From Mobula hypostoma (taxonomy: Eukaryota): a stretch of DNA of 64,000 nt. How positions within the stretch are numbered: the stretch's first letter is position 1; every line of letters begins with the position of its first letter. A program made the translations under genes and the position numbers. The stretch covers positions 153,078,001-153,142,000 of the forward strand of contig NC_086104.1 in NCBI RefSeq assembly GCF_963921235.1. The letters are read 5' to 3'. Below the pieces are notes generated by a model, which worked only from the letters and a program-made list of their open reading frames with translations, had not been told where the DNA came from and made no database searches. This document shows, one piece after another, positions 44 to 44,751 of this stretch.

Positions 44-1287
44 CTTCTTTCATCTTTTCCTTTCAGTGTCTTGATGTTAGAGCTTTTGACATCTCGCCGC
101 TTAACTGTGCTCATTACTGTTTTTGGAGATCCACTTACATTTTGTACTGCCCCTTTACTTTTTATATTTCTTGTAGGAGACTCCAAGGTTGAATGCAACT
201 TTTGAGCAGATCTTGTAAAAGGTTTCCATATTGTCACTGGCCTACTGGCAGCAGAATTAGATCCATTCTGTATGCTTGCACTGTACAGAGATCTCTCCAC
301 TTTGACACTTGCAAACTGCTGTTCTCTCTTGTTTAATTTCCCACAGATCTTTTCCATCTTCTCTTTCGGAATTGTCACCGTACTTGTAGATTTAGCTGCT
401 GCTGAGGTTGTCTTAACCACTCTGGGGGCCACTGTTGAGGCTCCTACAGGCTTGGAGTCACCTACAGGCCTGGCTGCTCCTGGGGCGGCCCTGAGCTCAC
501 CCACGGGCCTGGCTGCTCCCGGGGCGGCCCTGGGCGCACCCACGGGCCTGGCTGCTCCCGGGGCGGCCCTGGGCGCACCCACGGGCCTGGCTGCTCCCGG
601 GGCGGCCCTGGGCGCACCCACGGGCCTGGCTGCTCCCGGGGCGGCCCTGGGCGCACCCACGGGCCTGGCTGCTCCCGGGGCGGCCCTGGGCGCACCCACG
701 GGCCTGGCTGCTCCCGGGGCGGCCCTGGGCGCACCCACGGGCCTGGCTGCTCCCGGGGCGGCCCTGGGCGCACCCACGGGCCTGGCTGCTCCCGGGGCGG
801 CCCTGGGCGCACCCACGAGCCTGGCTGCTCCCAGGGCGGCCCTGGCTATATTGTCAGTACCAATTGCCCATGATTGATTGTCTGAAGCAGTATTCTTTAA
901 TTTGCAGTCTTGAGTATTATTTGCTCGTAAAGTAAACGGCTTAATTAAAGCTCTGTTTGAAGACTGTCCCACAATTTGAGCTTTACCAACTGTGAGTTTA
1001 TTTTCCTTTTCTTGGTCGCTTGAGTTATAATGAAATTCACCACATGCTGAAGCTTCATGTTGCAAATCCCCCACACATTGTCTGGATTGGGTCACTGGAT
1101 CAGCGATAGATTCCTTTGACTCCACAGGGAGTAAAACAGTCATAACTTGTTTAGTGAGTGTGGATTTTGAATCACACTGAACTTGATTCCTAGAAATTAC
1201 TGATTCGTAATGATTCATGCATGTTGGGTTCTTCACACTGTTTAGCTTAGATGGTTTTGTGTGAGCATCATGCTTCCGATTTCCCCC
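44..1287 (-). CDS. CKAP2L: CKAP2L large coding exon 4 (GGNRK...KDERR)
   Basis: Lies within ORF 40..1314; TTTCAG acceptor ending at 1288, GTAAAA donor at 43; KEN box (QEKENK); basic, Ser/Thr-rich. Confidence 0.88.
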
Positions 1288-11050: not shown

Positions 11051-11094
11051 CATCCTAGCAAGCCGTTTCTCCTCCGTTCAGAGCCCCAAACCGT

Positions 11095-11715
11095 GCTTCC
11101 AGGTGAGGTAACGCAAAAGATTCACCTGCGAATCTGCCGGGGTCCGATACGGCCTCCTCTACATTGGTGAGACCCGTGGTAAATTGGGAGACCGCTTCGT
11201 CGACCGCTCTGTACCATCCGCCACAGGCGGGACTTCACGATAGCCAATTATTTACATTCCGATTTCCATTCCCGTTTCGACGTGTTGGCCCATGCCTCCT
11301 CTTGTGCCAAGTTGTGTCCACCCTCAGGGTGGAGGAGCAACCCCTTATATTACGTCTAGGTAGCCTCCAACCTGATGGCATAAATATCAATTTCTCCTGG
11401 CGGTGAATAAATTCCCCACTCTGCCCTTTCACTTCTTCTCACCTGCCTGTTACTTGCCCCTGGGTCCACTGTTCCCTTTTTCCCGCGGTCCACTCTCTGC
11501 TATTAGATTCTTTTTTTTCTCCAGCCCTTTACCTTTCCTACCCACTTCTCTTCACCTATCACCCTCCAGCTCTCCTCGTTTCTCCTCCCTCCACCCTTTT
11601 ATTCTCACGTATTTCCTCTTCCTTCTCAGTCCTGAAGAAGGGTCTCGGCCCAAAACGCCGACTGTCTATTAGATGTTGCCTGACTTGCTGAGTTCATCCA
11701 GTATTTTGTGTCTGT
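11095..11715 (+). mobile_element. Penelope-like element 3' fragment
   Basis: YIGET-like ctctacattggtgagacc, EEQPLILRLGSLQPDGININFS, and a terminal degenerate hammerhead motif. Confidence 0.78.
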
Positions 11716-18795: not shown

Positions 18796-19253
18796 GTTTT
18801 TATTTCATTGTATGTTTCAATGTACAATGTCCAGATAAATAATTCTGAATCTGAGAGCTTATAGATGTCAGAAACTTTATGTACTTTACCTTTTCACAGA
18901 ATATTCAAGGAAATTTGAAATGAAGAGGGGACTTGTGATTTGAAAATAACATATTTAATCAACCAATAAGAAAGTTTCTCCACCTGTACAGTAATAATTC
19001 AAATAATAACAATAATTATTGAATTATTATATTTTTGTATTTGAAAACTCAACACATTATTCTCACGATTAAATAGCTCTAAATGATAAAACGTAAACGT
19101 GAGCAAATATTGCTGCCTGTATATCTCAGTAATTAGAAGATAATTCTATCTACTGTTAATCAAATAAGAGATATTCTGTACTTTGTACATACATACTCTC
19201 TAAACCAACAATTTCTGATTTGTTTTCTAAATAACACAGAGAATTAAAATGCC

Positions 19254-19466
19254 TCATTTAGCTGTGAAGATCGTGATTCTGTTATGGTGTTTCTTCTCAT
19301 CCATTTCAACTGGCTGCTTGTCCCTGTGGGATGTGCTGATGTACCACCCATGATGTAGAGCCGACTCAAACTCAAAGTAATGGCCTGCACCTGAAACCTT
19401 CTTGAAGAAAATGAAGCGAAGCAGGTCAGTGGCACTACTGATATTTTGCAAATTCTGATCCCATTT
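19254..19466 (-). CDS. IL1B: IL1B copy A exon 6 (terminal)
   Basis: KWDQNLQ...LLRFIFFKK...FESALHHGWYIST...TIFTAK*; putative ATTAAA polyA signal at 18954-18959. Confidence 0.94.
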   Translation of the reverse strand, partial: KWDQNLQNISSATDLLRFIFFKKVSGAGHYFEFESALHHGWYISTSHRDKQPVEMDEKKHHNRITIFTAK

Positions 19467-22400
19467 CTGTGAAAATAAATGTCAGAAACGAAGTTAAGTA
19501 CAGTTACATTTCAAATGAGAAAGCTATAAATAGTATTACTCAGGACAGGCTGCCTCCACAGCAGGTGCTGAGCATGTGTTGCTGGGATGAGATTTGTGCC
19601 AGCTGCATGTTTGTAAAGATAGCCCTAACCTTGCCAACCCTTTCAGTATTTAAAGTGTTCAGGCTGGAGAGAATTGGGATCCTCTGCTCTGTTTAAACTT
19701 CTCATTACTTAATTACCTATCAGTTAAAAGTCGCTAACAATTCAGTTTTGAAACTGTTCTGAGTTGGCTGACCTGAATTGGGGAAGGGACATAGTTCTCA
19801 ACATTCCAGGATTGGGGACAAAAGTACAGAGTACTGACCACTGACCTCACAGATTAGGATATTAAGTAAGGATTTAGTTGTGATATCACTCTCCAGTCAA
19901 GAGCGTTCAGTTTCAATGATCAGCTCTGTAGAAATGTATTTTTTTCATCTTATGAGTGAGTGTGTGTGTGTGAGAGAGAGAGAAAGCATTAAACCTATCT
20001 TCTCAATGCTAACTTCTGATTGTGCCGTTTTACTCCTTTTTCCAATAATTTATTCTTTGTTCTCTTCCTTGCCATCAATTCACTTTGATTTTCATGCTAA
20101 CTAGCAAAACCTTGGGTAACATGCAGGGGACAATTAACCCGCAGGTCTTTAGGATACGGACAAAAGTGGAGCACCTGGAGCAAGCACACCTCCAGAATGG
20201 AGAATGGTCAGTACCTGGAATGGAAATTCTTCCGGAGGAAATCAGATATGGTGAAAGGTGTTGGAAGGTTCTCAATGATGTTATGGAACCTGAATATATG
20301 CTGGATATAGGCTAACAAAGCCAGTGTAAGGGAGATGTTTTGAAAAGTGGATAAAATTCTCTGTCACATGTGATTTGCAGAAGGCCCAAGGAAAAGGTGG
20401 AAGCAGAGGCAGATTCTCCAGACAACAATACATGGGACTGTGTACCAGTCAGTTAACCACATGCATACATGATTTCTTACCTCCACTCGCATCCTGGGAT
20501 TGTCCGGTGGCCCTGAGCACGAGAGGAACGTATTCTGATTGTTTATTCCCAGAACAACCGGCAAATAATTTACTTCACCGGAAGTTGCCTTGTAGTACCT
20601 CACATTAAGTGTTACTGTCAACCAAAGGAGGGATATTTTAGCACAGTCATCAAAATACATATATACTCATATCAATAAAAGTGCTGCAATGTGGTAGCTA
20701 CTTTATTTGGAGTTATAACCAAGCTATTCATTGCATCTAAGTAATCTAAGGCCATGAATGGAGCATGACACATTGGGCGGGGCAACTATTCAGACTCCCA
20801 TTCTTACCCATGATTCATTCATAACTTTGTTTAGCTCTATATTCCTATTTCAGCTGGAGAAGCATGCTGATGACAGGGTTAAATAAAATGTCGCAGGCTG
20901 AAGGCAGCGCATTTTTAGAGAGTTAAAGGTATGAGAGGGACATGTGAAAAGCAATTGAAGACATTTCCTATTTTGTGCAATGTTCTTTCCCATTCGTCGT
21001 AACACCTTGAAGAGTTAGATACTTCTGCCAATCTTTCCATATTTTAAGTACAACAAAAAAGTGAGAGCATAAAGTTTACCCACCTTCGTCTGATGGCTGC
21101 TGCAAGAACATGGCCAGGAGCTGGAAGTTCTCTGATAACTTCAGGCATTTGTCTTGTTCATCCCTCACTTGCTGACACTCAGTCTTCATGAACCTGTAGG
21201 AGCTGGGCACCACTTCAGCACCTTCATAGTTGGTGTAAGTGATGGCTTCTGTTGGCACAAATAAGATTAAGTTATTGATCATGGTATATTAACAGAGATT
21301 AAACATAAATGAAATCCCGGACCCAACTATTTCTTTACTATTCCTGGGCATTGTCAGTGTTGGCAAATCTGAGTGTATTGATTTGTAGTATTGGCAGTTC
21401 TGAGTGTATTGATTTGTCGTGGTTATTCTGTTGAACATAGAACATTACAGCACCATATAGGCCTTTCAGCCTATGAAATTGTGATGTCCTTTTAATCTGC
21501 TCTGAGATCAATCTAACCCTTCTGCATAACTCTCCAATTTTTTATATATCATCATCAATGCCTATCTTAGATATTCTTAAACGGTCCTAGTGTATCTGCC
21601 TCTGCCACCACACTTAGCAGTGCATTCCACACATCCACCACTCTTTTATAAAGACCTTACCTCTGACGTTCCTCCTGTACTATCCTCTGATCACCTTAAA
21701 ATTATGCTACCTTGTATGAGCCTTCTCTGCCCTGGGAAATGTTTCTGGCGATCCACTGTCTATTTTATCATCTTGTACATCTCTGTCAGGTCACCTCTCA
21801 TCCTTCTTTGCTTCAAGGAGAAAAGCCTTAGCTTGCTCAACCTTTCTTCATAAGACATGCTTTCCAGTCCAGTCAGTATGCTGTCTCTTTTGGGTTTTTT
21901 TTTTGATAACCCTTCTTCTCAAATCTTTGTGGGAAAGGCACAGTCCTGCATTTTGTAGGAAATCTCATGACAGTGATGAGCATCAGTGAAGGCTCAGTGT
22001 TAACAGAACCACTGGGATCAAGAGCAGATTGCAGGCCTTCACATTGGAACCAGTGCTTCCAATTGTAACTAATCACGACAGACAGAGTAACAATACTGAA
22101 AGGAAAGATCAGCTCACCTTCTACAAGTGCATTGAAGTTTCCAAGCAAATCAGTGTCTCCAAAGCAAGTACTTTCACAGTCCCAGCTGTTTGTGCATGGC
22201 TGCTGCAACTTCCTCTTGAATTTTTCAACTGCAAGAGCCAACATGATGGCTTTCTCCAGTGTCAGCTTTGCAGAACCAGCCGTGCTAATAGATAAGAACT
22301 TTCCCGTGATCTTCAATTGGTAACTGTCTGAATGGTGACGTGCAGTGCTCAGCTCCATCAGACTTGGTGATGTTTTTTGAAATGGGCTCTGCATAATGAG

Positions 22401-23533
22401 AAACCACCATTAAATCTCCCAGTTCAGCTATCATAATAATTTTAGAGGGCCTGATAGCTAGGGTACAGAACAATTGATATCAGGTCCATCCCAAGATCTG
22501 TGGGCTAAACATCAGACAGTGTAAAACTCACAGTTTAAAAGGGTCCCTGACATCATACTTTCCCATCTGGATTCTCTGATACCTCATGGCAATTAAATAT
22601 TTATTGATTCAAACTTGCACTAATTTTAACAATAATATCTTCCCCAAAACTTATTCTGGTATCATATCTATTATTCTTACCTTGACCCAGGGACAAGAAG
22701 TAGGAGATATAATATGACAATCCCCATTGTGCCAGTAACTTAAGGATCTGTAGATGAAAGACTTATTTCAGTCAGTTTATATGGAAAAGGGTAGATCACC
22801 TTCAGTAAGTTATTAACCATACATGAAAATCACAAATTCAAGAGATTCTGCAAATGCTAGAAATCCAGGGCAACACAAACAAAATGCTGGAGGAACTCAG
22901 CAGCTCAGGTTGCATCACCCAGCCTTTCTTTGACATTTTCCCCCTTCTTTTCCAGTCCCGATGAAGGGTCTTGGCCTGAAACTTCAGCTGTTTATTCATT
23001 TCAGTTACTGAAATAATTAGTTACATGTTGCTCTGAATCCTAGGCAATGGAAGTGGGGCCAGTCAGATATAAACCTGCTCCACGTCCACTTGTCTGTAGC
23101 TAGCCTTCACACACTTACAAAATAATATGTCTGGGATCTGGCAGGATGCACTGACCTTTATTTGAAAATTAGAAAAAACAATTCTGAGAAAACCGTAAAT
23201 ATTCTGAATATTGTCACAGTTACCAAATCTGATAATAATCAACTATAAGTAGACTATGCCACGCGTATAACCAATGTTATACTTCCCTTTCTCTAAAATA
23301 CTGCACAGACAATTAAGTCTAAATATTTTCTCCAAATTGTACTCTCATTCTTAATGATAAGAGTACCATTCTGTTGGTTTGGTTTGAGCTGAGATCAGAC
23401 ATATTTAGTAGCTGTAAATATATTCACTGTTCAAAAAGGGCACTAATATGTTTGCACAACTATGTTTTACATACTAAACAAAAAGTGCTGTAGAGAAACC
23501 ATTGGCTCACCTCAGGGATTCACTGTCAGCCAT
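19254..23533 (-). CDS. IL1B: Interleukin-1 beta, copy A (290 aa). Exons 23511-23533, 22681-22747, 22118-22388, 21084-21248, 20481-20614, 19254-19466.
   Basis: All introns are GT-AG with consistent phases; 873-nt open frame. IL-1 family signature-like FESALHHGWYISTSHRDKQPV, VRDEQDKCL, LPVVLGI..FLSC, LLRFIFFK; pro-domain LALAVEKFK. Syntenic with CKAP2L. Confidence 0.93.
20481..20614 (-). CDS. IL1B: IL1B copy A exon 5
   Basis: VTLNVRYYK...LPVVLGINNQNTFLSCSG...RVE; GTAAGA donor. Confidence 0.93.
21084..21248 (-). CDS. IL1B: IL1B copy A exon 4
   Basis: EAITYTNYEGAEVVPSSYRF...VRDEQDKCL...; phase 1-1. Confidence 0.92.
22118..22388 (-). CDS. IL1B: IL1B copy A exon 3 (propeptide)
   Basis: SPFQK...LALAVEKFK...FGDTDLL...LVE; AG/GT boundaries. 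Confidence 0.9.
22681..22747 (-). CDS. IL1B: IL1B copy A exon 2
   Basis: CTACAG acceptor, GTAAGA donor, 67 nt; conserved in copy B. Confidence 0.82.
23511..23533 (-). CDS. IL1B: IL1B copy A exon 1 (MADSESL+AG)
   Basis: Strong Kozak acaATGG; donor GAG|GTGAG; about 110 nt downstream of the TATA-like box. Confidence 0.78.
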
Positions 23534-23639
23534 TGTAATTTTTACAGATCCCGTCTCAGTCCTCGTAATAGCGTAGCTCTCAGATTGTCAGAATAGTACT
23601 GCGTGAGTTCTAATTTTGCTCTGCTGATGATCAGCCTCT

Positions 23640-23870
23640 ATCCCTTATTTAAAGTTCACTGTCCTTGTGTGCTCCTCCTCCAGGGTGTGACACAGTGAGT
23701 GGAAACTTTATGATTACAAAGTTTGGTGAATTAGCCTCTCACTTCCTCACTTGCAGATCTTGCCAAAATTACGTCCTTGTGACATGGAAGTTTGAAAATT
23801 TTTTTTAAAAATCAGAATAATATTACTGAGGTTGCACTGCAAAAGAATTAAAAATGAAATTCCCCTTTCT
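23640..23870 (-). promoter_or_regulatory. IL1B copy A proximal promoter: TATA-like TTTAAATAA (23645-23653), PU.1/ETS GAGGAAGTG (23740-23748), kB-like GGGGAATTTC (23856-23865)
   Basis: The TATA-like and PU.1 motifs recur at equivalent positions in copy B and the pseudogene; the kB-like motif recurs in the pseudogene flank. Confidence 0.6.
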
Positions 23871-25720
23871 TTATGTTTATTTACATTGGTTTGACAGCAA
23901 TTTTCTATCTCAATGTTTTGGAGGCTAAGAATCAAATTGTTTAATGATAATGCTGGAAAATTCATTTTGTAACAAACAGAAAATGTGGTTCTTTGTCCAT
24001 TCTGTTCTATTTCATTTATTAAATGGATTAAGATCAGTTTATTTGTCACATGTACATCGAAACATTCGGTGAAAGGCATCGTTTATGTCAAATCAGATCT
24101 ACCAGGTTTGTGCTGCCATGCTTCCGGTGCCAACGTGGCATGCCCACAAGCCTAACCGTATGTCCTTGGAATGTGAGAGGAAACCAGATACCCAGTGGAA
24201 ACCCATGCGTTCACAAAGAGAACATACCAACTACTTACAGACATTAGCCAGAACAAACTTTCCACCTGTGCACTGATCTGGTGAGCACTTAATCATTTCT
24301 TTCCAGATTTCCAGTTAGCGGAGTATTCTATTTTGTGTTTATGGACTATGTCAAAGGTTGCAGATCAATAAATCAAGATGTGTTATGGATAATTGTGCAT
24401 AGTGGAATTGATGCTTCCATGAGGTGGAAACACAATCAGATCAAAGTCACTGCTATTGTAGTCAAAAATGGAGATTAAGTATTAAATGATCTGAGGAGGC
24501 TATTCAATGGATATTCCCATCCTCAAAGATGGTATGCCTAGGCATTTATAATTACCATCAGACTTTAGTGCCAAGACAGTAATCAATCTCAGCCTCTTCC
24601 TAAAGTCTGAAGCACGACTGAAACTAATCATCAGTCACTTTAAAGAATTGCATTCCAGGAGTAACAGTGATGCCCCTTGATATTGTCAAAAGTCATTGAA
24701 TAGTAGATTGGTCTGTAAAGTAAAGCCCATGTTATTAAGAGGAGAGAGGGAAATTGAATCCAAAATTTGTTATATGGCAGGACACAAAGATAACGATTGT
24801 TGAGTGTGATTGTGATTGGAATTTGTGATGTTCACTGTAGGAGTCTACAGGGTTCAGAACACATTGCTTTGCTGTTTACAATATATATGTTTTAAATAGA
24901 TAGGCACGATCAATTAATCTGCACATGATAGAAAAATTGATTTCTGGAGGAAAGGTTTATACAGCAACAGAATGCAGTTGGTCTGGTCAGTTGTTTAGAA
25001 AAGTGATTTCCAGAGAAAAGATTTATACTGCAACAAGATGTAAATGGTCTGGTCATTTGGTCAGAAAAGTGGAAACAGGATTTTAACTATGGAAATAATT
25101 AATCAAGGTTTCTTTGGATCCAAAAGCGTTGTCTACAAGGATGGTGCCAGATTGTTAAGATTTGTAAAAAAAAAGACGGTACTCTGACGGTTGATCATGA
25201 TAAGATAAACAAATCCTTTCAGGAATTTTATACTTCTTTATATCAATCAGAATTTCCTGATGACCCCACTATAATGCACGAATTTTTGAAGACATTGAAT
25301 ATTCCAAAATTACCACCCAATGAACGTTTAGAACTAGATGTACCTATTACGGTAGAAGAAATAAAGAATGCTATATCCACCATGAATTCAGGTAAAGCAC
25401 CTGGTCCAGACAGTTATACAGTAGAATTTTTAAAATCCTTTTCTACTATACTTTCTCCTTGGTTATGTAGAATCTTTAAGGATGCAGTATTTATAGGTAA
25501 ATTACCACAATCTATTTATCGAGCTTCTATTTCCCTAATTCTTATAAAAGATAGGGATCCTACTGAATGTGCATCTTATTGGCCTATATCTTTGCTGAAT
25601 GTGGATTCTAAGATTTTTTTCTAAAATATTGGCAACGAGACTGGAGAATGTATTGCCTCAAATTATTTCTGTTGATCAGACTGGATTTATTAAAAATCGT
25701 TACTCCTTTAAGATTAGGAG

Positions 25721-26373
25721 AGGAGAAGATTGCGGCGCGACACAGCAAGCGTGGCCACTCCGAAGTGATATCGTATTTGTCAGTAGGTACCATGCACATT
25801 CCTGATTTGATGGAGACGGATCTGAGAAGCACGGAGGAACATCTGGAGAAGCTGCTGAAATGCCTGCTTCACTGCCGCTGCTATTGTGTGATCGAGAATC
25901 TCCGGAGGGGAAGGCCCCAAATCCTCGGCTTTGCCTATTGCCTGTTGCCGGGGCCGGGGTCGAAGTCGAAGTGCTCAGCAGAGATGGTGCTTGGTGTTCG
26001 AGGGCTGGTCGGAGGCTCGAAGTTTTCGGACGGACTCAAGAGTCGGCTGTGGTCGGGTACTTCCAGGGTGCTGCATCGGCAAGTTTGCGGCGCTGGAAGC
26101 TCATGGAAGGGAGAGTTTTTCTTCCTTCTACCATCTGCGTAAGATGATGGGACTTTCGAGAGACTTTGAGACATTTTTTTTACCGTGCTCATGGTCTGTT
26201 CTTTATCAAATTATGGTATTGCTTTGCATCGTTGTAACTGTATGTTATAATTATGTGGTTTTTGTCAGTTTTTCAGTCTTGGTTTGTCTTGTGTTTCTGT
26301 GATATCATTCTGGAGGAACATTGTAAATGACAGTCAAAGAGGACTGCGTGTCCTCTTAATCTAATCTAATCTA
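25721..26373 (+). mobile_element. About 650-bp non-autonomous retroelement nested in the L1; second copy at 52651-53331
   Basis: Interrupts ORF2 between ...IRR and LMNIAY; starts aggagaagat(t/g)gcggc and ends in (TAATC)n. Confidence 0.8.
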
Positions 26374-28828: not shown

Positions 28829-31619
28829 TAATATATTGATTCAGCCTTGTTTTGTTCTGTTTGGAGTTTTTTTTGGGTCTAGTAATTTATTTTTTTTCTT
28901 CGCTTTTTTTGTTGTTTTGGAATTTTTCTTTGTGATATCCTTTTCTTTTTATTTCTTTTTTCTTCATGATTAATTATATCAAGAGTTTGGAAGTCTATTA
29001 CACTTGTATTATTTGTAGTTTCTTTTATATATGTTTATTACCAATAATGTAACTCCAATCTCTTTGTATCACTATTGTTATTATGTTTATGAACTTGAAA
29101 ACTAATAAAAAGATTTAAAAAAGAAAGAAAGTAGAAGGATGGTGGAAGTAGATTCAATAACAGGACTTATTTTCAATGGAAAATTTGGTAAAATCTTGAA
29201 AGAAAATATGCAAATATGCATGCATGTTATGGTGAAAGAACAGTCAAATGTGACTACTGTAATGTTCTTTCAGATGGGTGGAACCTCAAATGATGTCATA
29301 TAATTCTTTTTCCTTCCCTTCCCTATAGTCTTACTCTGAAGACAAAACAAGAAAAGAATTGACGCACTGGTTAACAGAGGGTAGAACTGAACTGTTGGGT
29401 CAAATATGTTAACACATAATATTCCCTCAGGTGCACATTCACGTTTTCAAAACCTGGAAAGGTATCCTACTTTCTAACAGATGGGATTCCATCTTAATAA
29501 ACACAAGCAAAAGTCCGCACCCATTTATTCTTTCAAAGTCATTTAACACATAGGGGCTGGTACCAATCATCAGCTTTGGACTTAGTCCCAGAACTTGCAT
29601 GCCAAGGTTTCATCAGAGATGTTTTTGTGTGAGACAAAAGTGAGCAATGTAAGCCAATCTCATCATGAGGGAAAGTTTCAGAAAATTGTAACTTGACAGC
29701 TCACTGAGGTCTCAGTCTAAAATGTCGACTGTACTCATTTCCATAGATGCTGCCTGGCCTGCTGAGTTCCTCCAGCATTTTGTGTGTGTTGCTTGGTTTT
29801 CCAGCATCTGCAGATTTTCTCTTGTTTGTTACTAAGGTCAGTGACTGCAGTTACTTGAAACATTCCCAGTTGTCAATGCAAACCAGAATACCTGTGGTCA
29901 GTTGTACTCTATATACAGGACAATGCTGAGACTGAGGTTGACAAGGCAATGAAATAAAACAGAGGCACTGGCATACAGTGATTCTTACAGTTTCCTTCCC
30001 AATTTACAGAGACTCAGATTAAGTAGATGCTGACGTACTCCACTTCACTGATGCCATCCGATTCCTAAATGGACATTGAACCCTTGGACACTACCTCACT
30101 TTTTTTTAATATACAGTATTTCTGTTTTTATCACATTTTTAATATCTATTCAATACATGTAACTGATTTACTTGTTTATTTATTATTATTTATTTGTTTT
30201 ATTATTTTTTTCTCTTTCTGCTAGATTATGTATTGCATTGAACTGCTGCTGCTAAGTTAACAAATTTCAAGTCACATGCCGGTGATAATAAACCTGATTC
30301 TGATTCTGACATCGTACAGGTGCTTGAGCATGTGTTGCTGGGTTGAGATTTGTGCTAGCTGCATGTTTGTAGAGTTACCCCTAACCTTGCCAATCTTTCT
30401 TCAGTGTTCATTTTGTGAGAGAGAGGGTGACCATTCAGCCTATTTCGTGAATGCTAGCTTTTCTTGGTTCCATTGTCCCCCATTTTCCTGTAATCTATTC
30501 TCTGTTCTGTTCCTTGCCATCAATTCCTTTCAATTCTCCTGGGTAACATGACCAATTAACCTGCATGTCTTTGGGATATGGAGGAATATGGAGCATAGTC
30601 ATTAAAACATGTAACTACTCAAATCGATAACAATTTAGTTTTACTGGGTAGCTAATTTATTTGGAGTTATAACTGAGCTACTCATTGGGTCAAAGTTAAC
30701 CGAGGTAAAAACTGGACTATGACAAATTGTTCATCTACACATCAGCGCAGGACAGAACAACTTTTCGGACTCCCATTCCCACTCATCATCCAGTTACCTG
30801 CAGACATTCATTATTTTTCTGAGCTTTACATGCCTATCCCTGTTCGAGTAGATTGATAAAACCACAATGGAAACTCAAAGCCTCAGCTCAGAGGCAGCAT
30901 GTCCAGGGAGGTAGGGAAGGGTGAAAAAGGAAATGAAGAGAATTCCACTTCCTGTGAAGTGTTCTCCCTGTTCACCATAACAGCTTCAAGATTTAGATAC
31001 TTCTGCCAATTTTCTCTTATTTTAAATGCAGCAGAAAAGAGGGGTGTAAGGTTTACCTACCTTCATCTGATGGCTGCTGCATGAACATGGCTAGGTACTA
31101 GAGGGACTCGGATAAATCAGGCATTTGTATTCTTCATCCCTCACTCACTGACACTCACTCTTCATGAATCTGTAAGAAGTGGGCACCATCTTCATCACTG
31201 GTGTAGTTGATGCCTTCTGTTAGCACAAATCAGAATGAATTATTTATCATGGTAAAGTACAGTTTAAACAGGAATAAAATATTGGACTGTAATGTTTCTT
31301 TAATATTCTCCTATAGTGTCCTTTAATATTCTTATGTGCAAAGGATGGTCATAAGAGCTGTCTGTGAGTTTCTAATGTTTCTGTACTGACAAACAGCCTC
31401 CATACTTATTTAACGTGCACTGGACTCCATATGCTCCTCTCTCCTGGGTGTGCCACTGTGTAAATTTTATGATTGCGCAGTCGTTTGGTGAACTTTCCTC
31501 TCACTTCCTCCATTTGCAGATCTTTCCAAAGATTACACTGGTGACATGGAAATTTGTAAGTTTGAAAATCCGAATTATTTCACTGATAAGAGAAAATCTA
31601 TAGATACTGGAAATCAAAG

Positions 31620-36840: not shown

Positions 36841-38110
36841 ATGAAAATCTGTTAACTCTGCTTCTCGTCCCATAGATGCTGCCTGACCCTGTGATCCTCT
36901 CCAGCATTTTCTATTTATGTTTCTAAGAATCTAAAGATATTTGCTTTTCTCTCTTTGATGCAAAAAAAGACGTTGTACTTCGCTTCAAACCTATTTTCCA
37001 CACAATGTGCTTTCAATGCTGGAGCTGTGTGCACTAACTTCTAACGAGTTGTTCTGGAATCCGCTCATTCATCCGATTAAACTGCATCAGCAGGTTCAAG
37101 TGTTCACTTTAAATGGCAATATGTCCACCTGTATCATTGGCCTATCTAAGTCTTCAAAGTTCACTACACACTCAAGTTTGTGTTCTTGTACATTTTGAAA
37201 TTGTTCCCTTTATTTAAGAAACCTTACTCTTTCAAGGTTTGACATTGTAAGTAACTATGAGGGAGAATATTTGCTTGGCTTGACGTGCAAAGATGTACCT
37301 CGGATGGACAACCAAAATGTTGTATTTATGATGGTTGGCTATATTTAACTAACATCACTGCAAGGTATGTTAGCTATTCACTTATTGTTCTCTAGTTATA
37401 AATTGTCTTGCCCTTTCCTTCATTACTCTAGTGATTAACTTTAACCATGCTTCCTTTATGCTCTGTAAAATGAGCTGGGCCACCCAAGGCCAAAAGCTCA
37501 AGGCAATGATAAGAAACGTAGCCAGCAGCTAATTAAAGGGGGCAAAAATAAACAAGTGGCTGTGGAAATACTGAAGCATCATTTGCCAATGAGAGATGGG
37601 GCTTCTGTACTTGCAAACCCTCCCCCCCACCAGATCAGAGGTCCATGTGGGCAGGAGGTTTGAAGGTCGGTGATCTTTGAGATATGAGAGTCAGCAAGGC
37701 CAGAGTTAAAGTCCTGAAGTCTACAGTCCCAACATCTGTGAGGCAGGTGCTTGAGGCCTGAATTCGGGGTCCTGTCATCAGCATCCAGAGTACAAAGCTT
37801 TTGTTTGAGGTACCATCATTGACAAATCATGGGATTGATACTGATGATCAAAGCCTGAAAGTCTGGAGGACTGTGTGCGAGTGTGTGCAAGGGAGGGAAG
37901 GAAGTGGCTTGTGGGCATGTTATGTTTGTGCTGGAATGTATGGCGACACCTGGGGGCTGCCCAGCTTGTCATTAAGTGTGATTTGGTGTGTTGGCGCTTA
38001 ATGGATACCACGTATTTTAATTTACATACAATAAATCAGTCTGAATCTGAGAATATTAAGGTAATATGAAAAGTGAAGAGGAGAACTTGTTATTTGAAAA
38101 TAATATATTT

Positions 38111-38417
38111 AATCAATCAATGAGAAGGTTTCTCCTCCAGTACAACAATAATTTAAATAATAACAATAAATATAGAAATATCATAATTCTGAATTCCAAA
38201 ACTCAGCACACTTTTTTCACCAATAAATAACTCCAAATGATAAAACTTAAATGCAAGCAAATATATAATCAACAAACAAGGTTTCTCCTCCAGTACAGCA
38301 ATAATTTAAATAATAACAATAAATATAGAAATATCATAATTCTGAGTTCCAAAACTCAGCATACCTTTTTCACCAATAAATAACTCCAAATGATAAAACA
38401 TAAGAGCAAGCAAATAT
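38111..38417 (-). repeat. About 153-bp tandem duplication in the IL1B copy B 3'UTR, carrying AU-rich elements
   Basis: gtttctcctccag begins at 38128 and again at 38281. Each unit has TTATTTATT and TTATTTAAA on the mRNA strand. Confidence 0.9.
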
Positions 38418-38560
38418 TGCTGCCTATACATATCAATAATTAGAAGACAGTTCTATCAACTATTAATCATATAAGAGATTCCCTGTACTTAGTACATACA
38501 TACGCACTAAACCAACAATTTCTGATTTGAGTTCTGAACAGTACAGAGACTTAAAATGCC

Positions 38561-38773
38561 TCATTTAGCTGTGAAGATAGTGATTCTCTTGTGGTGTTCC
38601 TTCACGTCCATTTCAACCGGCTGCCTGTTCCTGTGGGATGTGCTGATGTACCACCCACGGTACAGAGCCGATTCAAACTCAAAGTAATGGCCTGCACCTA
38701 AAACCTTCTTGAAGAACACGAAGCGAAGCAGGTCAGTGGCACTACTGATACTTTGCAAATTCTGATCCCATTT
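38561..38773 (-). CDS. IL1B: IL1B copy B exon 6 (terminal)
   Basis: LLRFVFFKK...FESALYRGWYIST...TIFTAK*; putative ATTAAA at 38108-38113. Confidence 0.94.
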   Translation of the reverse strand, partial: KWDQNLQSISSATDLLRFVFFKKVLGAGHYFEFESALYRGWYISTSHRNRQPVEMDVKEHHKRITIFTAK

Positions 38774-41700
38774 CTGAGCAAAGAAATGACAGAAACAAAG
38801 TTAAGTACAGTTACATTTTAAATGACAAAACTGTAAATGATATTACTCAGGACAGGTTGGCTTCCACATAGCAGATGTCTGAGCATGTGTTGCTGGGATG
38901 GGATTTGTGCCAGCTGCATGTTTGTAAAGACAGTCCTAACCTTGCCAACCCTTTCAGCAGTCAAAGTGTTCGTGAGGAGTTCCAGTCTGGAGAGCAATGG
39001 TATGCTTTGCTCTGTTTGAACTTCTCATGGCTTAATTATCTATAATCCATAAATTGCTAACAATTCAGTTTTGAAACTGTTCTGAGTTGGCTGACCTGAA
39101 TTGGGGAGGGACGTAGATCTCAATATTCCAGGACTGGGGACAAAAGTACAGAGTACTGACCACTGACCTCACAGATTAGGATATTAAGTGAGGATTTAGT
39201 TGTGAAATCACTCTTCAGTCAAGAACTTTCAGTTTCAATGATCAGATCTGTAGAAAATGTATTTTTTTCCATTTAGAGAGAGAGAGCTTTCAGTCTTTCT
39301 CAATGCTAGCTTTTGATTGTGCCATTTTACCCATTTTTCCAAAAATTTATTCTTTGTTCTGTTCCTTGCCATCAATTCACTTTGATTTTCCTGCTATCCA
39401 GTAACACCCTGGGTAACATGCAGAGGACAATTAATCTGCACATCTTTGGGATATGGAGGAAATTGGAGCACCTGGAGCAAGCACACATCCAAACTGGAGA
39501 ATGGCCAGTACCCTGGAAAGGAAATTCTTCAGGAAGAATTTGGATATGGTGAAAGGTGTTGGAAGGTTTCTCCCTGCGGTTATGGAACCTTAAAAAATGC
39601 TGGATATAGGCTAACCAAGCTATTGTAAGGGACACATTTCGAAAAGTGGATCAAATTCTGTCACATGCGATTTGCAGAAAGCTCAAGGAAAAGGTGGAAG
39701 CAGAGGCAGCTTCTCCAGACAACAACATGGGACTGTGTACCAGTCAGTTAACCACGTGCATACATGATTTCTTACCTCCACCTGCATCCTGGGATTGTCC
39801 GGTGGCCCTGAGCACGAGAGGAACATATTCTGATTGTTTATTCCCAGAACAACTGGCAAGTAATTTACTTCACCAGCAGTTGCCTTGTAGTACCTCACAT
39901 TCAGCATTACTGTCAACCAAAGGAGGGATATTTTAGCACAGTCATCAAAACACATATATGCTCATATCAATAAAAGTGCTGCAATTTGATAGCTACTTTA
40001 TCTGGAGTTATAACCAAGCCATTCATTGGATCTAAGTTAACCGTGGAAACAACTGGAGCATGACACATTGGTGCAAGACAGAACTATTCGGACTCCCATT
40101 CCTACCCATAATTGATTCATAGCTTTGCTTAGCCCTATATTCCTATTTCAGCTGGAGAAGCATGCTGATAACAAGGTTAAATAAAATGTCACAGCCTGAA
40201 GGCAGCACATGTTTAGGGAGTTAAAGGTATGAAAGGGACATGTGAAAAGCAATTGAAGCCATTTCCTCTTCTGTGCGATGTTCTATCCCATTCGTCATAA
40301 CACCTTGAAGATTTAGATACTTCTGCCAATCTTTCCATATTTTAAGTACAACAGAAAAGTGGGAGCATAAAGTTTACCCACCTTCGTCTGATGGCTGCTG
40401 CAAGAACATGGCCAGGAGCTGGAGATTCTCTGATAACTTCAGGCATTTGTCTTGTTCATCCCTCACTTGCTGACACTCAGTCTTCATGAACCTGTAGGAG
40501 CTGGGCACCACTTCAGCATCTTCATAGTTGGTGTAAGTGATGGCTTCTGTTGGCACAAATAAGATTAAGTTATTGATCATGGTATATTAACAGAGATTAA
40601 ACATAAATGAAATCCCTGACCCAACTATTTCTTTACTATTCCTGGGCATTGTCAGTGTTGGCAAATCTGAGTGTATTGATTTGTAGTATTGGCAACTCTG
40701 AGTGTATTGATTTGTTGTGGTTATTCTGTTAAATGTAGAACATTACAGCACCATATAGGCCCTTCAGCCCATGAAATTGTGATGTCCTTTTAACCTATTC
40801 TAAGATCAATCCAACCTTTCTCTCCTGCAAAACTCTGCATTTTTTAATATATCATTCATGCCTATCTTAGATGTTCTTAAATGGTCCTAGTGTATCTGCC
40901 TCTGCCACACACTTGGCAGTGTGTTCCACGTACCCACCACTCTTTTATAAAGACCTTACCTCTGACATTCCTCCAGTACTTTTCTCTGATCACCTTAAGA
41001 TTATGCTACCTTGTATTAGCCTTTTCTGCCCTGGGAAAAGTTTCTAGCCACCCACTGTCTATCGTATCATCTTATGCACCTCTATCAGGTCATCTCGCAT
41101 TCTTTGTCTCATGACAGTGAATGAGCAAAAGTGAAGGCTCAGTGTCAACAGAACCACTGGGATCAGGAGCAGATTGCAGGCCTTCACATTGGAGCCACTG
41201 CTTCCAATTGTAACTAATCACGACAGACAGAGTAACAATACTGAAAGGAAAGATTAGCTCACCTTCTACAAGTGCATTGAAATTTCCAAGCAAGTCAACA
41301 TCTTCAAAGCAAGTACTTTCACAGCCCCAGCTGTCTGTGCATGGCTGCTGCAACTTCTCCTTGAATCTTTCAACAGCAAGGGCCAACATGATGGCTTTCT
41401 CCAGTGTCAGCTTTGCAGAGCCAGTCGTGCTAATGGACGAGGACCTCCCTGTGATCTTCAAGTGGTAACTGTCTGAATGGCGACGTGCAGTGCTCAGCCC
41501 CATTGGTGATGTTTTTTGAAGTGGACTCTGCATAATGAGAAACCACCAATAAATCCCCCAATTCAGCTATCACAATAATTTTAGAGCGCCTGATAGCTAG
41601 GGTACGGAACAATTGATAAGCAGGGAGAAGTCTATCCTAGGATTCGTGGGATAAACATCAGACAGTGTGTAAGACTTGAAACCTCACAAATAAAAATTAA

Positions 41701-42758
41701 TTCTGACATCGTGCTTTTCTGTTGTGATTTTGATACCTCATGGCAATTAAATATTTATTGATTCAAACTTGAAATAATTTTAACAAAAATATCTTCCCCA
41801 AAATCTGTTCTGGTATCATCTTGATAATTCTTACCTTGACCCGGACACAGGAAGTAGGAGATGATATATGACAATCACTGTTGTGCCGGTAACTTAAGGA
41901 TCTGCAGATGAAATAATTGTCTTGGTCAGTTTATATGGAAAAAGATAAAACCACCTTTAGTAAATTATCAACCGCACAAGAAAATCGCAAACACAGGAGA
42001 TTATGCAGATGCTGGAAATCCAGAGCAACACACACAAAATTCTGGAGGAACTCAGCAGCTCAGGGAGCATCACCTAGCCTTCCTTTGGCATCTTCCCCCT
42101 TTCTTTCCAGTCCTGAAGAAGAGTCTTGACTCATAACGTCAACTATTTATTTAATTTCGTACATGAAAATCTCAAAGTTACTGAAATTGTCAGTTATGTG
42201 TTGCTATGAATCCTAGGCAGTGGAAGTGGGGCCAGTCAGATATAACCCTACTCCACATCCACTTGTCTGAAGCAGGCTTTCACACACTTACAAAATCATA
42301 TTTCTGGGCTCAGGCAGGATGCACTGACCTTTCTTTGTAAATTAGAAAAATTATTCTAAGAAAACCTTACAAACTATGAATATTGCCACAGTTAACAAAT
42401 CTGATAATAAGCGACAGGCAAGTTTAATTATTAATATTGTATGGCAGACAGATAACCAATGTTATATTTCCCTTTCACTCTAAAGTACTGCACTGATGAT
42501 TAAGGCTGGGCAATTTCTCCAACCTGTATTCTCATTCTTTATGATAAGAATTTCATTCTTTCGGTTTGGTTTGAGCTCTGGTCAGACATATTTATTAGAT
42601 GCAAATATATACACTATTCAAAATGGGGCACCAGTGTGATTGCATAGTACTGTAAGTTTTAAATGCTAAATAAAATTACAGTAGACAAAACCGTGGGCTT
42701 ACCTTAGAGATTCACTCTCAGCAATTGGGATTTTTACTGATCCAGTCTCGGTCCTCAT
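38561..42758 (-). CDS. IL1B: Interleukin-1 beta, copy B (299 aa). Exons 42703-42758, 41835-41901, 41263-41527, 40382-40546, 39776-39909, 38561-38773.
   Basis: Exon-by-exon paralog of copy A; 900-nt open frame; signature FESALYRGWYISTSHRNRQPV; all splice sites intact. Confidence 0.93.
39776..39909 (-). CDS. IL1B: IL1B copy B exon 5
   Basis: VMLNVRYYK...LPVVLGI...FLSCSG...QVE; 134 nt. Confidence 0.93.
40382..40546 (-). CDS. IL1B: IL1B copy B exon 4
   Basis: EAITYTNYEDAEVVPSSYRF...; 165 nt. Confidence 0.92.
41263..41527 (-). CDS. IL1B: IL1B copy B exon 3
   Basis: SPLQK...LALAVERFK...FEDVDLL...LVE; 6 nt shorter than in copy A. Confidence 0.9.
41835..41901 (-). CDS. IL1B: IL1B copy B exon 2
   Basis: 67 nt, AG/GT, homologous to 22681-22747. 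Confidence 0.82.
42703..42758 (-). CDS. IL1B: IL1B copy B exon 1 (MRTETGSVKIPIAESESL+AG)
   Basis: First ATG after the TATA-like box, in frame; AAG|GTAAG donor. Confidence 0.75.
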
Positions 42759-42854
42759 AATGGCGAAGCTCTCTGAAGTTGTATCTGACCGTCTCAGATT
42801 GTCAGGATATTTCTGTGTGAGTTTCTAAAGTTGCTCTGCTGACGAACAGCCTTT

Positions 42855-43000
42855 GTTCCTTATTTAAAGCTCACTGAACTCACATGCTCCTCCTCTCGGG
42901 TGTGCCACTGTGTTTGGAAATTTTACAATTGCAGTCTTGTTTGGTGAATTATCTGCCCACTTCCTCATCTTGCAGATCTTCCCAAAATTAAGCTCTGGTG
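42855..43000 (-). promoter_or_regulatory. IL1B copy B proximal promoter: TATA-like box (42860-42868), PU.1/ETS site (42958-42966)
   Basis: Homologous to 23640-23790. Confidence 0.6.
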
Positions 43001-44751
43001 GCATAAAAGAGAAAATCTGTAGATGCTGGAAATCCAAGCCACTCACACAAAATGCTGGAGGAAGTCAATAGGCCAGGCAGCATCCATGGAAAAGAGTACA
43101 AACTCTTGCTGAAGGTTCTCAGCCTGAAATGTCGACTGTCCACAACACTAGCTGTATGTCTTTGGAATGTGAGAGGAAACTAGATACCCAGTGGAAACCC
43201 ACGCATTCACGAAGAGAACATACAAACTACTTATAGTCATTAGCCAGAACAAAATTTTCTCCTGTGCACTGATCTGGCGAGCATTTAATCATCTCTTTCC
43301 AGAACTCCAGTTAGTGGAGCATTCTATTTTGTGTTTACAGACTATCTCAAAGCCAAAGTCTGCAGATCAATAATCAAGAATTTATTCATTGTAATTGTGC
43401 ATAGTGGAATTGATGCTTCATGAGGTGGAAACACAATCAGATCAAAGTCACTGCTATTGTGATCAAAAATGGAGATTAAGTATTAAATGGTCTGAGGAGG
43501 CTATTCAATGGATATTCCCATCCTCAAAGATGGTATGCCCAAGCATTCATAATTACCATCAGACTTTAGTACCAAGACAGCAATCAATCTCATCCTCTTC
43601 CTAAAGTCTGAAGCACAACTGAAACTAATCATCAGTCACTTTAAAGAGTTGAATTCCAGGAGTATTGCCCCTTGATATCGTCAAAAGTCGTCAAATAGTA
43701 GATTGGTCTGTAAAATAAAGCCCATGCTCTTAAAGGGAGAGAGGGAAATTAAATCCAAAATTTGTTAAATGGCAGGACACAAAGATAAAGATTGCTGAGT
43801 GTGATTGGAATTTGTGATGTTCACTGTAGGGGTCTACAGGGTTCAGAACACACTGCTTTGCTTTTTACAATATACATGGTTTAAGTAGTAGGCATGATCA
43901 ATTAATTTGCAGATGATAGAAAAATTGATTTCTAGAGGAAAGGTTTATACTGCAACAAGATGTAGATGGTCTGGTCAGCTGGTCAGAAAAGTGGAAACAG
44001 GATTTTATCCATGGAAGTATTTAATCAAGGTTTCTTTGGATCCAAAAGCGTTGTCTAGAAGGATGGTGGAAGTAAATTCAATAACAAAACTTTCAATCAA
44101 AAATTTGATAAAATCTTGAAGGAAAATATACAAATATGCAGGGTTATGGTGAAAGAACAGTCAAATGTGACTACCATAACATTCTTTCATCTGGATGAAA
44201 CTTCAAATGATGTCATATAATTCCTTTTCCTTCCCTTCCCTATAGCCTAACTCTGAAAATAGAACAAAAGAACGGATGTGCAGGTTAACAGAAGGTGGAG
44301 CTAAACTGTTGAGTCAAATATGTTAGCATATAATATTCCCTCAGCTGCCCATTCACGTTTTCAAAGCCCAGAAAGGTATTACTTTCTAACGGATGTGATT
44401 CCATCTTCACTAACACAAGCAAATGTCCACACCCATTTCTTCTTTCAAAGTCAGTTAACACAAAGGGATCAGTATCAATCATCACCTTTGGACTTAGTCC
44501 CAGTACTTGCATGCCAAACTTTCATCATAGATGTTTTTTATGTGAGACAAAACTGAGCAACATAAGCCACTGTCATCTTGAGGGAAAGTTTCAGGAAATT
44601 GTAATACGTCAGTTCACTAAGGTCAGTAACTGCATTCACAAGAAACATTCTAGCTCTCAATGCATACCAGAATGCCTATGGTCAATTGTACTTTATATAC
44701 AGGTTAATGATAACAGATGAGGAGCGTTTGATGGCTGAAGCATTCGGTGTG

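What the first reader, a model, noticed from the sequence alone, without database searches (positions are those of the whole stretch)
38108..38560. AU-rich element dosage doubled in copy B and eroded in copy A
Seen: a ~153-bp tandem duplication in the copy B 3'UTR gives 7 ATTTA pentamers by my count. These include two perfect TTATTTATT nonamers (38222-38230, 38375-38383) and two TTATTTAAA. The homologous sites in copy A read CTATTTAAT and TTATTTGAA, and A has 3 pentamers and no nonamer. Established: UUAUUUAUU is the preferred tristetraprolin/ZFP36 site driving cytokine mRNA decay. Inference: B mRNA is short-lived and A mRNA more stable.
Basis: partly seen in the sequence, partly recalled or inferred. 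Interest (0 to 1): 0.7.

Follow-up and report, generated by a model that had tools for sequence, protein, structure and literature searches.

The report
Duplicated decay signals in ray IL-1β
One of two neighbouring interleukin-1β genes of a devil ray has a real, transcribed 153-base repeat in its mRNA tail that doubles its "destroy me quickly" signals, while the sister gene has lost them; this is a tidy but ordinary variation on a well-known cytokine control, and its effect on mRNA lifetime is untested.

Summary
On the minus strand, the 3'UTR of IL-1β copy B (RefSeq XP_062913178.1, Mobula hypostoma) carries a 153-bp tandem duplication (38125-38417, 95% identity). It has 7 AUUUA, 4 UAUUUAU and 2 UUAUUUAUU motifs. 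Copy A (XP_062913179.1) has 3, 0 and 0.

New evidence:
- Spliced RNA contigs from two Mobula species cross the duplication junction and include the second nonamer, so the repeat is real and transcribed at least to 38217.
- The proposed ATTAAA poly(A) signal lies at the same position as the skate AATAAA and the whale-shark ATTAAA.
- The duplication also copied this hexamer. The upstream copy now reads ATTATA, which explains read-through into unit 2.
- Skate and shark keep the AUUUA cluster next to the poly(A) signal. Copy A has lost both of its pentamers, so "erosion" has outgroup support.
- A and B are old paralogues shared with stingrays.

Caveats:
- With the duplication collapsed, the AUUUA count is not above what composition predicts.
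- The exact 3' end was not seen, because only contigs were available.
- The A-like RNA found belongs to an antisense transcript, not to A mRNA.
- The half-life difference remains an inference.

Both genes are already annotated. Interest is low to moderate.

The parts
38561..38776 (-). Last coding exon of IL-1β copy B (stop TGA 38561-38563)
   Evidence: Pfam IL1 hit 7.5e-09. tblastn of XP_062913178.1 (P0033) residues 229-299 to 38776-38564. Splice joint 38773->39776 with GT..AG on the minus strand in three RNA runs.
38091..38560 (-). 3'UTR of copy B, about 470 nt. The distal end is inferred from the poly(A) signal and was not observed.
   Evidence: RNA contigs cover 38217-38750. No AATAAA or ATTAAA lies between the stop codon and 38113. 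The UTR is alignable to skate and whale-shark IL-1β UTRs.
38265..38417 (-). Repeat unit 1 (upstream in the mRNA). It carries UUAUUUAUU (38375-38383), AUAUUUAUU (38318-38326) and UUAUUUAAA (38305-38313).
   Evidence: TRF, motif positions, fully covered by RNA contigs.
38264..38269 (-). Copy of the poly(A) hexamer at the end of unit 1. It now reads ATTATA and is presumably inactive.
   Evidence: Alignment of unit 1, unit 2, copy A, the skate and the shark. Sequence read. The same letters are in organism B RNA, where the contig's only mismatch is at 38342.
38112..38264 (-). Repeat unit 2 (downstream). It carries UUAUUUAUU (38222-38230), AUAUUUAUU (38165-38173) and UUAUUUAAA (38152-38160), plus a new AUUUA at 38248-38252.
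   Evidence: TRF and motif positions. RNA contigs reach 38217, so the first 48 nt including the nonamer are shown to be transcribed. The rest is inferred.
38108..38113 (-). ATTAAA poly(A) signal of copy B (inferred)
   Evidence: It lies in a block conserved with copy A (18954-18959, ATTAAA), Amblyraja (AATAAA) and Rhincodon (ATTAAA).
18935..19254 (-). 3'UTR of copy A, about 320 nt: 3 AUUUA, no UAUUUAU and no nonamer. The conserved cluster next to the poly(A) signal is mutated to UAAUUAUUG and AUUUGAA.
19240..19424 (+). Exon of a plus-strand spliced transcript antisense to the last exon of copy A. It is joined to exons ending at 11102 and starting at 25713.
   Evidence: A-like contigs (records 13 and 20). 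Their loose ends map to 11073-11102 and 25713. Both introns are GT..AG on the plus strand only.

Best explanation
The window carries two old tandem paralogues of interleukin-1β of the devil ray Mobula hypostoma, both on the minus strand.

In copy B, the distal ~153 nt of the 3'UTR was tandemly duplicated. This segment runs from just after a conserved GCAAUAUUUGC block to the poly(A) hexamer, and the join has AUAU microhomology. The duplication copied three AU-rich motifs and the hexamer itself.

The upstream hexamer copy now reads AUUAUA. Cleavage is therefore not signalled there, and the mRNA runs through both units to the conserved AUUAAA at 38108-38113.

The mature B mRNA thus carries 7 AUUUA, 4 UAUUUAU and 2 UUAUUUAUU motifs. 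Copy A has lost the ancestral cluster next to the poly(A) signal and has no 7-mer or 9-mer site.

Shown: the duplication, its transcription across the junction, its presence in at least two Mobula species, the positional conservation of the poly(A) signal, and the loss of motifs in A.

Inferred: ZFP36-family (tristetraprolin-type) tandem zinc-finger proteins load more heavily on B mRNA and speed its deadenylation and decay. That would make B the sharply transient copy and A the more stable one.
For: - Duplication and motif counts.
- RNA: splice joint 38773->39776 and contigs 38370-38750 and 38217-38399 in X5 and X7 (organism A) and X14 (organism B). In X5 and X7 the junction contig has the same mean depth as the exon contig. 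A contig from organism C reaches 8 nt past the junction.
- No canonical poly(A) hexamer lies upstream.
- The poly(A) signal and the adjacent AUUUA cluster are conserved in Amblyraja and Rhincodon. The unit 1 hexamer is ATTATA.
- Motif table, given as B / A / skate / whale shark: AUUUA 7/3/4/5; WWAUUUAWW 6/0/1/3.
- Gene identity.
- Paralogue age: tree.
- TTP 9-mer and Il1b as a TTP target: PMC8484758. AUUUA motifs are typical of vertebrate IL-1β UTRs: PMC4880838.
Against: - After collapsing the duplication, AUUUA counts in both UTRs are no higher than dinucleotide shuffles give. The UTRs are 73% A+U.
- The motifs are dispersed, 57-153 nt apart, not overlapping as in class II AREs.
- None of the roughly 8 differences between the units hits a motif, but that is expected by chance about a quarter of the time.
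- No contig lies on 38004-38216 in any run, so inclusion of the last ~125 nt of unit 2 is inferred, not seen.
- In X14 the junction contig has half the depth of the exon contig.
- TTP binds mouse Il1b in macrophages without destabilising it.
- No structural signal: fold z-scores are -0.5 and -1.1.
Confidence: 0.5

Rival explanations
1. The duplication is a neutral slippage or microhomology event in an A+U-rich UTR. It is fixed in Mobula but has no measurable effect on mRNA half-life. The motif differences between A and B are drift in low-complexity sequence.
For: Collapsed motif counts are not above composition. The nonamer at 38375-38383 is not conserved in the skate or shark. No selection signal is detectable on the motifs within the ~5% divergence between units. 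TTP binding does not always cause decay.
Against: The motif cluster next to the poly(A) signal has been conserved since sharks and rays diverged, which argues that it matters. B keeps all six duplicated motifs intact in both units and in two species. A has lost every WWAUUUAWW site.
Confidence: 0.35
2. Most B transcripts end inside or just after the junction, through alternative or non-canonical polyadenylation. Only unit 1 and the second nonamer would then be in the mRNA, and the dosage is not fully doubled.
For: No contig lies on 38004-38216 in four runs. The organism C contig ends at 38257. In X14 the junction contig has half the exon depth.
Against: Contigs reach 38217, which is 47 nt beyond the ATTATA hexamer and too far for cleavage directed by it. 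No other hexamer lies there. The missing stretch is what de Bruijn bulge-popping and tip-clipping would remove, because the units share 34-mer and 45-mer stretches (38366-38399 = 38213-38246; 38300-38344 = 38147-38191). This is inference from how such contigs are built. The tool itself warns that contigs show presence and not ends. The poly(A) signal at 38108 is conserved.
Confidence: 0.12
3. The tandem repeat is an assembly artefact or a private allele of the sequenced individual.
For: None beyond the general risk with repeats.
Against: The junction-spanning contig is present in three RNA runs from different samples and studies, from two species, with 0-1 mismatches. A third species reaches past the junction.
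Confidence: 0.02

Closest known systems
AU-rich elements of mammalian cytokine mRNAs (TNF, IL1B) bound by ZFP36/tristetraprolin
   Same: AUUUA pentamers and the UUAUUUAUU 9-mer in the 3'UTR of a pro-inflammatory cytokine mRNA. IL-1β mRNA is a documented TTP target (PMC8484758).
   Different: Here the motifs are dispersed single sites, not the overlapping cluster of TNF (class II). Neither binding nor decay has been tested in any elasmobranch, as far as the papers I searched show.
IL-1β 3'UTR 'instability motifs' reported for fish, amphibian and reptile cDNAs (for example the catshark IL-1β of Bird et al. 2002, cited in PMC4880838)
   Same: Several ATTTA motifs in the IL-1β 3'UTR are regarded as typical of vertebrates. 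The skate and whale-shark UTRs examined here have 4 and 5.
   Different: In Mobula B the number was raised by an internal tandem duplication that also copied the poly(A) hexamer. The sister paralogue has lost the conserved cluster.
Amniote IL1A/IL1B tandem pair next to CKAP2L
   Same: Two tandem IL-1 genes sit beside CKAP2L, with divergent regulation expected.
   Different: The ray pair arose independently within stingrays and devil rays (tree). Both copies are IL-1β-like in sequence.

Membership tests
Interleukin-1 family gene (IL-1β) | IL-1/IL-18 beta-trefoil domain (Pfam PF00340) encoded by the 3' exons | tested here: met
   PF00340 hit E=7.5e-09 on the last exon, above the curated cut-off. 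The penultimate exon scores E=3.8e-05, just under the cut-off. The sequence is identical to RefSeq 'interleukin-1 beta-like' of M. hypostoma.
AU-rich element (ARE) in an mRNA 3'UTR | Motifs lie within the transcribed, mature 3'UTR | tested here: met
   RNA contigs run from the spliced last exon through unit 1 and the junction to 38217. The remaining 3 motifs of unit 2 are placed in the mRNA only by inference from the poly(A) signal.
AU-rich element (ARE) in an mRNA 3'UTR | AUUUA pentamers in an A/U context; UAUUUAU core or UUAUUUA(U/A)(U/A) nonamer | tested here: met
   B has 7 AUUUA, 4 UAUUUAU, 2 UUAUUUAUU and 6 WWAUUUAWW. A has 3, 0, 0 and 0.
Class II ARE (TNF/GM-CSF type) | Two or more overlapping nonamers in one cluster | tested here: not met
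   The nonamers are 153 nt apart and neighbouring motifs are 13-57 nt apart. None overlap. The layout is closer to class I.
ZFP36/tristetraprolin target mRNA | Binding by the tandem zinc-finger domain and ARE-dependent deadenylation or decay | not testable with these tools
   This needs EMSA or CLIP and decay assays. Only motif presence is shown.
Tandem duplication | Head-to-tail copies with a defined junction, verified independently of the assembly | tested here: met
   TRF: period 153, 95% identity. Junction-spanning RNA contigs in X5, X7 and X14.
Functional poly(A) signal at 38108-38113 | Canonical hexamer 10-30 nt upstream of observed cleavage sites | tested here: inconclusive
   The hexamer is present and positionally conserved with the skate, the shark and copy A. 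No reads showing the cleavage site were available, because only contigs could be laid.

The most novel reading that the evidence does not exclude
Stingrays and devil rays independently split an ancestral IL-1β into two regulatory types at the post-transcriptional level. One is an ARE-rich, rapidly cleared copy (B), whose ARE module was further doubled in Mobula. The other is an ARE-less copy (A) next to CKAP2L, which is overlapped by a spliced antisense RNA starting near the CKAP2L promoter region. This would parallel the amniote IL1A/IL1B division of labour.
Probability: 0.15. Interest if true: 0.5.

Novelty: new member of a known kind. Interest (0 to 1): 0.25.

Why it matters
AU-rich elements in IL-1β mRNAs are textbook biology, and both ray genes are already annotated. 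The finding therefore does not open a new kind of system.

Its value is as a clean natural experiment. Two old paralogues have otherwise alignable 3'UTRs: one has lost every strong ARE site, and the other carries an exact internal doubling of the ARE module. The disabled internal poly(A) hexamer shows how such a duplication can be kept inside the mRNA.

Reporter constructs from A, from B and from B with one unit removed would give a direct dose-response test of ARE number in a cartilaginous fish, where cytokine mRNA turnover has not been studied as far as I could find.

Tried and rejected
1. Exact 3' end. Only one read-laying run was allowed and all four runs were Logan contigs, so no ends, strands or levels could be read. 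The absence of contigs on 38004-38216 is not evidence, because the repeat units share 34- and 45-nt stretches that break or prune de Bruijn contigs.

2. The A-like contig at 38544-38731 looked at first like proof that copy A is expressed. Its loose ends map to 11073-11102 and 25713 with plus-strand GT..AG introns. It is an antisense transcript, so I rejected it as evidence for A mRNA.

3. Orthologous DNA from Mobula birostris, Hypanus sabinus, Hemiscyllium and M. hypostoma's own record: gene tables were returned but no DNA ('file too large'). Pristis and a 108-aa fragment were not on record. I therefore could not test whether stingray B-type genes have the duplication.

4. Rfam on 37900-38800: only a chance-level snoR114 hit (E=0.67).

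5. RNA folding of both UTRs: no more stable than shuffles (z = -0.5 and -1.1).

6. Paper searches for Mobula IL-1 and for IL-1β paralogues with differing ATTTA content found nothing specific.

7. Searching the scan's own notes for ZFP36 or tristetraprolin in this genome found nothing.

8. Assembly artefact: rejected.

Full report
**What is in the sequence.** The stretch 38108-38560 is best read on the minus strand. It follows the last coding exon of an interleukin-1 family gene, whose peptide ends ...YFEFESALYRGWYISTSHRNRQPVEMDVKEHHKRITIFTAK with stop TGA at 38561-38563. That exon hits Pfam PF00340 (IL1) at E=7.5e-09, and the exon before it hits at 3.8e-05.

TRF reports a single tandem array at 38125-38417, with period 153, 1.9 copies and 95% matches.
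- Copy B has seven ATTTA between the stop codon and the ATTAAA at 38108-38113.
- Copy B has two TTATTTATT (38375-38383 and 38222-38230) and two TTATTTAAA.
- Copy A (stop near 19255, ATTAAA at 18954-18959) has three ATTTA and no nonamer.
- Neither UTR contains AATAAA.

**Is it more than chance?** Only partly.
- Dinucleotide-preserving shuffles of the 470-nt B UTR give 3.1 +/- 1.7 ATTTA, against 7 observed (P=0.03).
- With one repeat unit removed, the count is 3-4 against 1.9 expected (P=0.12-0.30).
- A has 3 against 2.3 expected (P=0.4).
- Both UTRs are about 73% A+U.

The high count in B is therefore the arithmetic consequence of the duplication. It is not an independent enrichment.

**Which genes these are.** A phmmer search with the last exon, followed by word-indexed searches, found elasmobranch IL-1β proteins. 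A cluster look-up showed that both window genes are already in RefSeq as 'interleukin-1 beta-like [Mobula hypostoma]':
- XP_062913178.1 (299 aa) maps at about 100% to copy B. Its exons are 42758-42702, 41903-41811, 41533-41249, 40547-40383, 39910-39776 and 38776-38564.
- XP_062913179.1 (290 aa) maps to copy A.

M. birostris, Hypanus sabinus and Hemitrygon akajei each have the same two types. A maximum-likelihood tree groups Mobula A with the stingray 290-aa genes (support 98/95) and Mobula B with the stingray 319-aa genes (91/86). Both groups sit inside one stingray/devil-ray clade (100/99). The A/B pair is therefore an old duplication specific to that clade, not a recent Mobula event. In M. 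birostris the A-type gene is followed about 8 kb downstream by a CKAP2-family gene on the same strand.

**Is the duplicated block in the mRNA?** Public runs were found that hold the stretch, and four were laid on 37500-40000. All four are Logan contigs, so ends, strands and levels cannot be read.
- Three runs (X5 and X7 from organism A; X14 from organism B) show the joint 38773->39776. Its CT..AC ends correspond to GT..AG on the minus strand, so these runs contain spliced RNA of this gene.
- In each of the three, one contig covers 38370-38750. A second, 183-nt contig covers 38217-38399 with 0, 0 and 1 mismatches.
- The second contig bridges the unit junction (about 38261-38265) by more than 40 nt on each side. 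It ends with a 31-mer unique to unit 2.
- This shows that the repeat is real, that it is present in two species, and that it is transcribed through unit 1, the junction and the second nonamer.
- A low-depth contig from a third organism (X13) runs from 38760 to 38257, which is 8 nt past the junction.

No contig lies on 38004-38216 in any run. I do not read this as an mRNA end. The two units share identical 34-nt and 45-nt stretches (38366-38399 = 38213-38246; 38300-38344 = 38147-38191). In a k=31 graph, the unit 2 path would therefore form a bubble plus a short dead end, which contig builders remove. That is inference from how such contigs are made, and the tool itself warns that contigs show presence and not ends.

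**The poly(A) signal.** I fetched IL-1β loci of Rhincodon typus (L001) and Amblyraja radiata (L003). Their 3'UTRs align with both Mobula UTRs over their whole length.

Conserved blocks include AAAUCAG-AAUUGUUGGUUUAGAGAGU-UGUAUGUAC-AGUACAG, GCAAUAUUUG, and UUAUUGCUGUACUGGAG. They end at a hexamer at the same position in every sequence:
- AATAAA in the skate.
- ATTAAA in the whale shark.
- ATTAAA in Mobula A.
- ATTAAA in unit 2 of Mobula B.

At the end of unit 1 the copy reads ATTATA (38264-38269), one substitution from ATTAAA, and a 3-nt deletion lies just upstream. With the internal hexamer disabled and no other canonical hexamer upstream, read-through into unit 2 is expected. The contigs that extend 47 nt beyond ATTATA agree with this.

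**Erosion in A or gain in B?** Just upstream of the UUAUUGCUGUACUGGAG block there is an AUUUA cluster:
- The skate has two AUUUA (CUAUUUAAA and UUAUUUAAU).
- The whale shark has three, including a UUAUUUAUU.
- Each Mobula B unit has two (AUAUUUAUU and UUAUUUAAA).
- Copy A reads AUAAUUAUUG...UUAUUUGAA at these positions and has none.

For this cluster, 'eroded in A' has outgroup support. For the other site, the B nonamer at 38375-38383, the skate reads UUAAAUAUU and the shark does not align. Its polarity is therefore open.

Motif totals, given as B / A / skate / whale shark:

| Motif | B | A | Skate | Whale shark |
|---|---|---|---|---|
| AUUUA | 7 | 3 | 4 | 5 |
| UAUUUAU | 4 | 0 | 0 | 1 |
| WWAUUUAWW | 6 | 0 | 1 | 3 |

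B is above both outgroups even before doubling at the stricter motifs, and A is below both.

**Age of the 153-bp duplication.** Apart from the distal end, the units differ at about 8 positions, roughly 5%. Organism B differs from the window by only 1 in 183 and 6 in 406 in the same region. The duplication therefore predates the split of those two Mobula species. It is far younger than the A/B gene duplication, where the UTRs are about 85% identical. Whether stingray B-type genes have it could not be tested, because no DNA was served for those assemblies.

**Mechanism.**

Shown:
- A fixed, transcribed internal duplication of the distal UTR module.
- A disabled internal hexamer.
- A conserved terminal hexamer.
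- Loss of strong sites in A.

Established knowledge:
- The TTP/ZFP36 tandem zinc-finger domain recognises the UUAUUUAUU 9-mer.
- Il1b mRNA is a bound TTP target, and its level rises in TTP-deficient mice.
- In bone-marrow macrophages, binding does not lead to decay (PMC8484758).
- Multiple ATTTA motifs are regarded as typical of vertebrate IL-1β UTRs (PMC4880838).

Inferred:
- B mRNA recruits more ZFP36-family protein and is deadenylated faster than A mRNA.

The sites are dispersed rather than overlapping, so this is a class I-like rather than a class II ARE. Neither UTR folds better than shuffled controls (z = -0.5 and -1.1), and Rfam finds nothing. I put about even odds on a real half-life difference caused by these motifs. 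A neutral duplication gets about one in three.

**A caution about copy A.** Contigs with 18 mismatches to B at 38544-38731 carry copy A's letters. However, their unaligned ends map to window 11073-11102 and 25713. The implied introns have GT..AG only on the plus strand (11102|GTGAGG...CACAG|19240 and 19424|GTCAGT...TTTAAG|25713). This RNA is therefore a spliced transcript antisense to A's last exon, starting close to where CKAP2L should begin on the other strand. It is not evidence for A mRNA. Sense expression of A in these samples remains unshown.

**Verdict.** The functional reading is reasonable but untested. The kind of element is well known and the genes are annotated. This is a new member of a known kind, with low to moderate interest.

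Noticed in passing
window 11073-11102, 19240-19424, 25713-25742 (+ strand): A spliced plus-strand transcript runs antisense to the last coding exon of IL-1β copy A. One 279-nt contig in X7 joins all three pieces, and a contig in X5 joins the first two. Both introns are GT..AG on the plus strand only. The first exon lies near where CKAP2L (minus strand) should start, so this may be a divergent promoter transcript.
   Followed up: partly
window 38264-38269 (- strand): The tandem duplication copied the poly(A) hexamer. The internal copy reads ATTATA instead of ATTAAA, and a 3-nt deletion lies just upstream. The same letters are in RNA of a second Mobula species.
   Followed up: yes
window 30580-31586: A third, partial IL-1β-like copy, about 70% identical to parts of A and B. 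Only an exon-4-like piece (31062-31192) still translates, so it is probably a pseudogene fragment. A further 59-nt UTR-like fragment lies at 5214-5270.
   Followed up: partly
window 18951-25005 vs 38261-43993: The A/B segmental duplication is 81-89% identical over about 6 kb, yet the protein tree places the split before the devil ray/stingray divergence. This implies either very slow elasmobranch substitution rates or some gene conversion between the copies.
   Followed up: partly
window 38340-38357 and 38187-38204 (- strand): Each repeat unit has a 7-bp hairpin, CUGAGUU-UUGG-AACUCAG; unit 2 keeps it through a G-U pair. It appears in the predicted fold but is absent from copy A and the skate. 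Its significance is unknown.
   Followed up: no
window 38776-39775: The last intron of copy B is covered by RNA contigs at lower depth than the exons in X5, X7 and X14. This looks like unspliced pre-mRNA, and no comparable coverage lies downstream of the gene.
   Followed up: no
window 37836-38003: Contigs at high depth (up to 105) with unrelated loose ends on both sides in X5 and X7. This looks like a transcribed interspersed repeat just downstream of copy B, not part of the IL-1β mRNA.
   Followed up: no
window 459-845: Tandem repeat with a period of about 78 bp, 95-98% identical between copies, seen in the self-comparison of the window.
   Followed up: no
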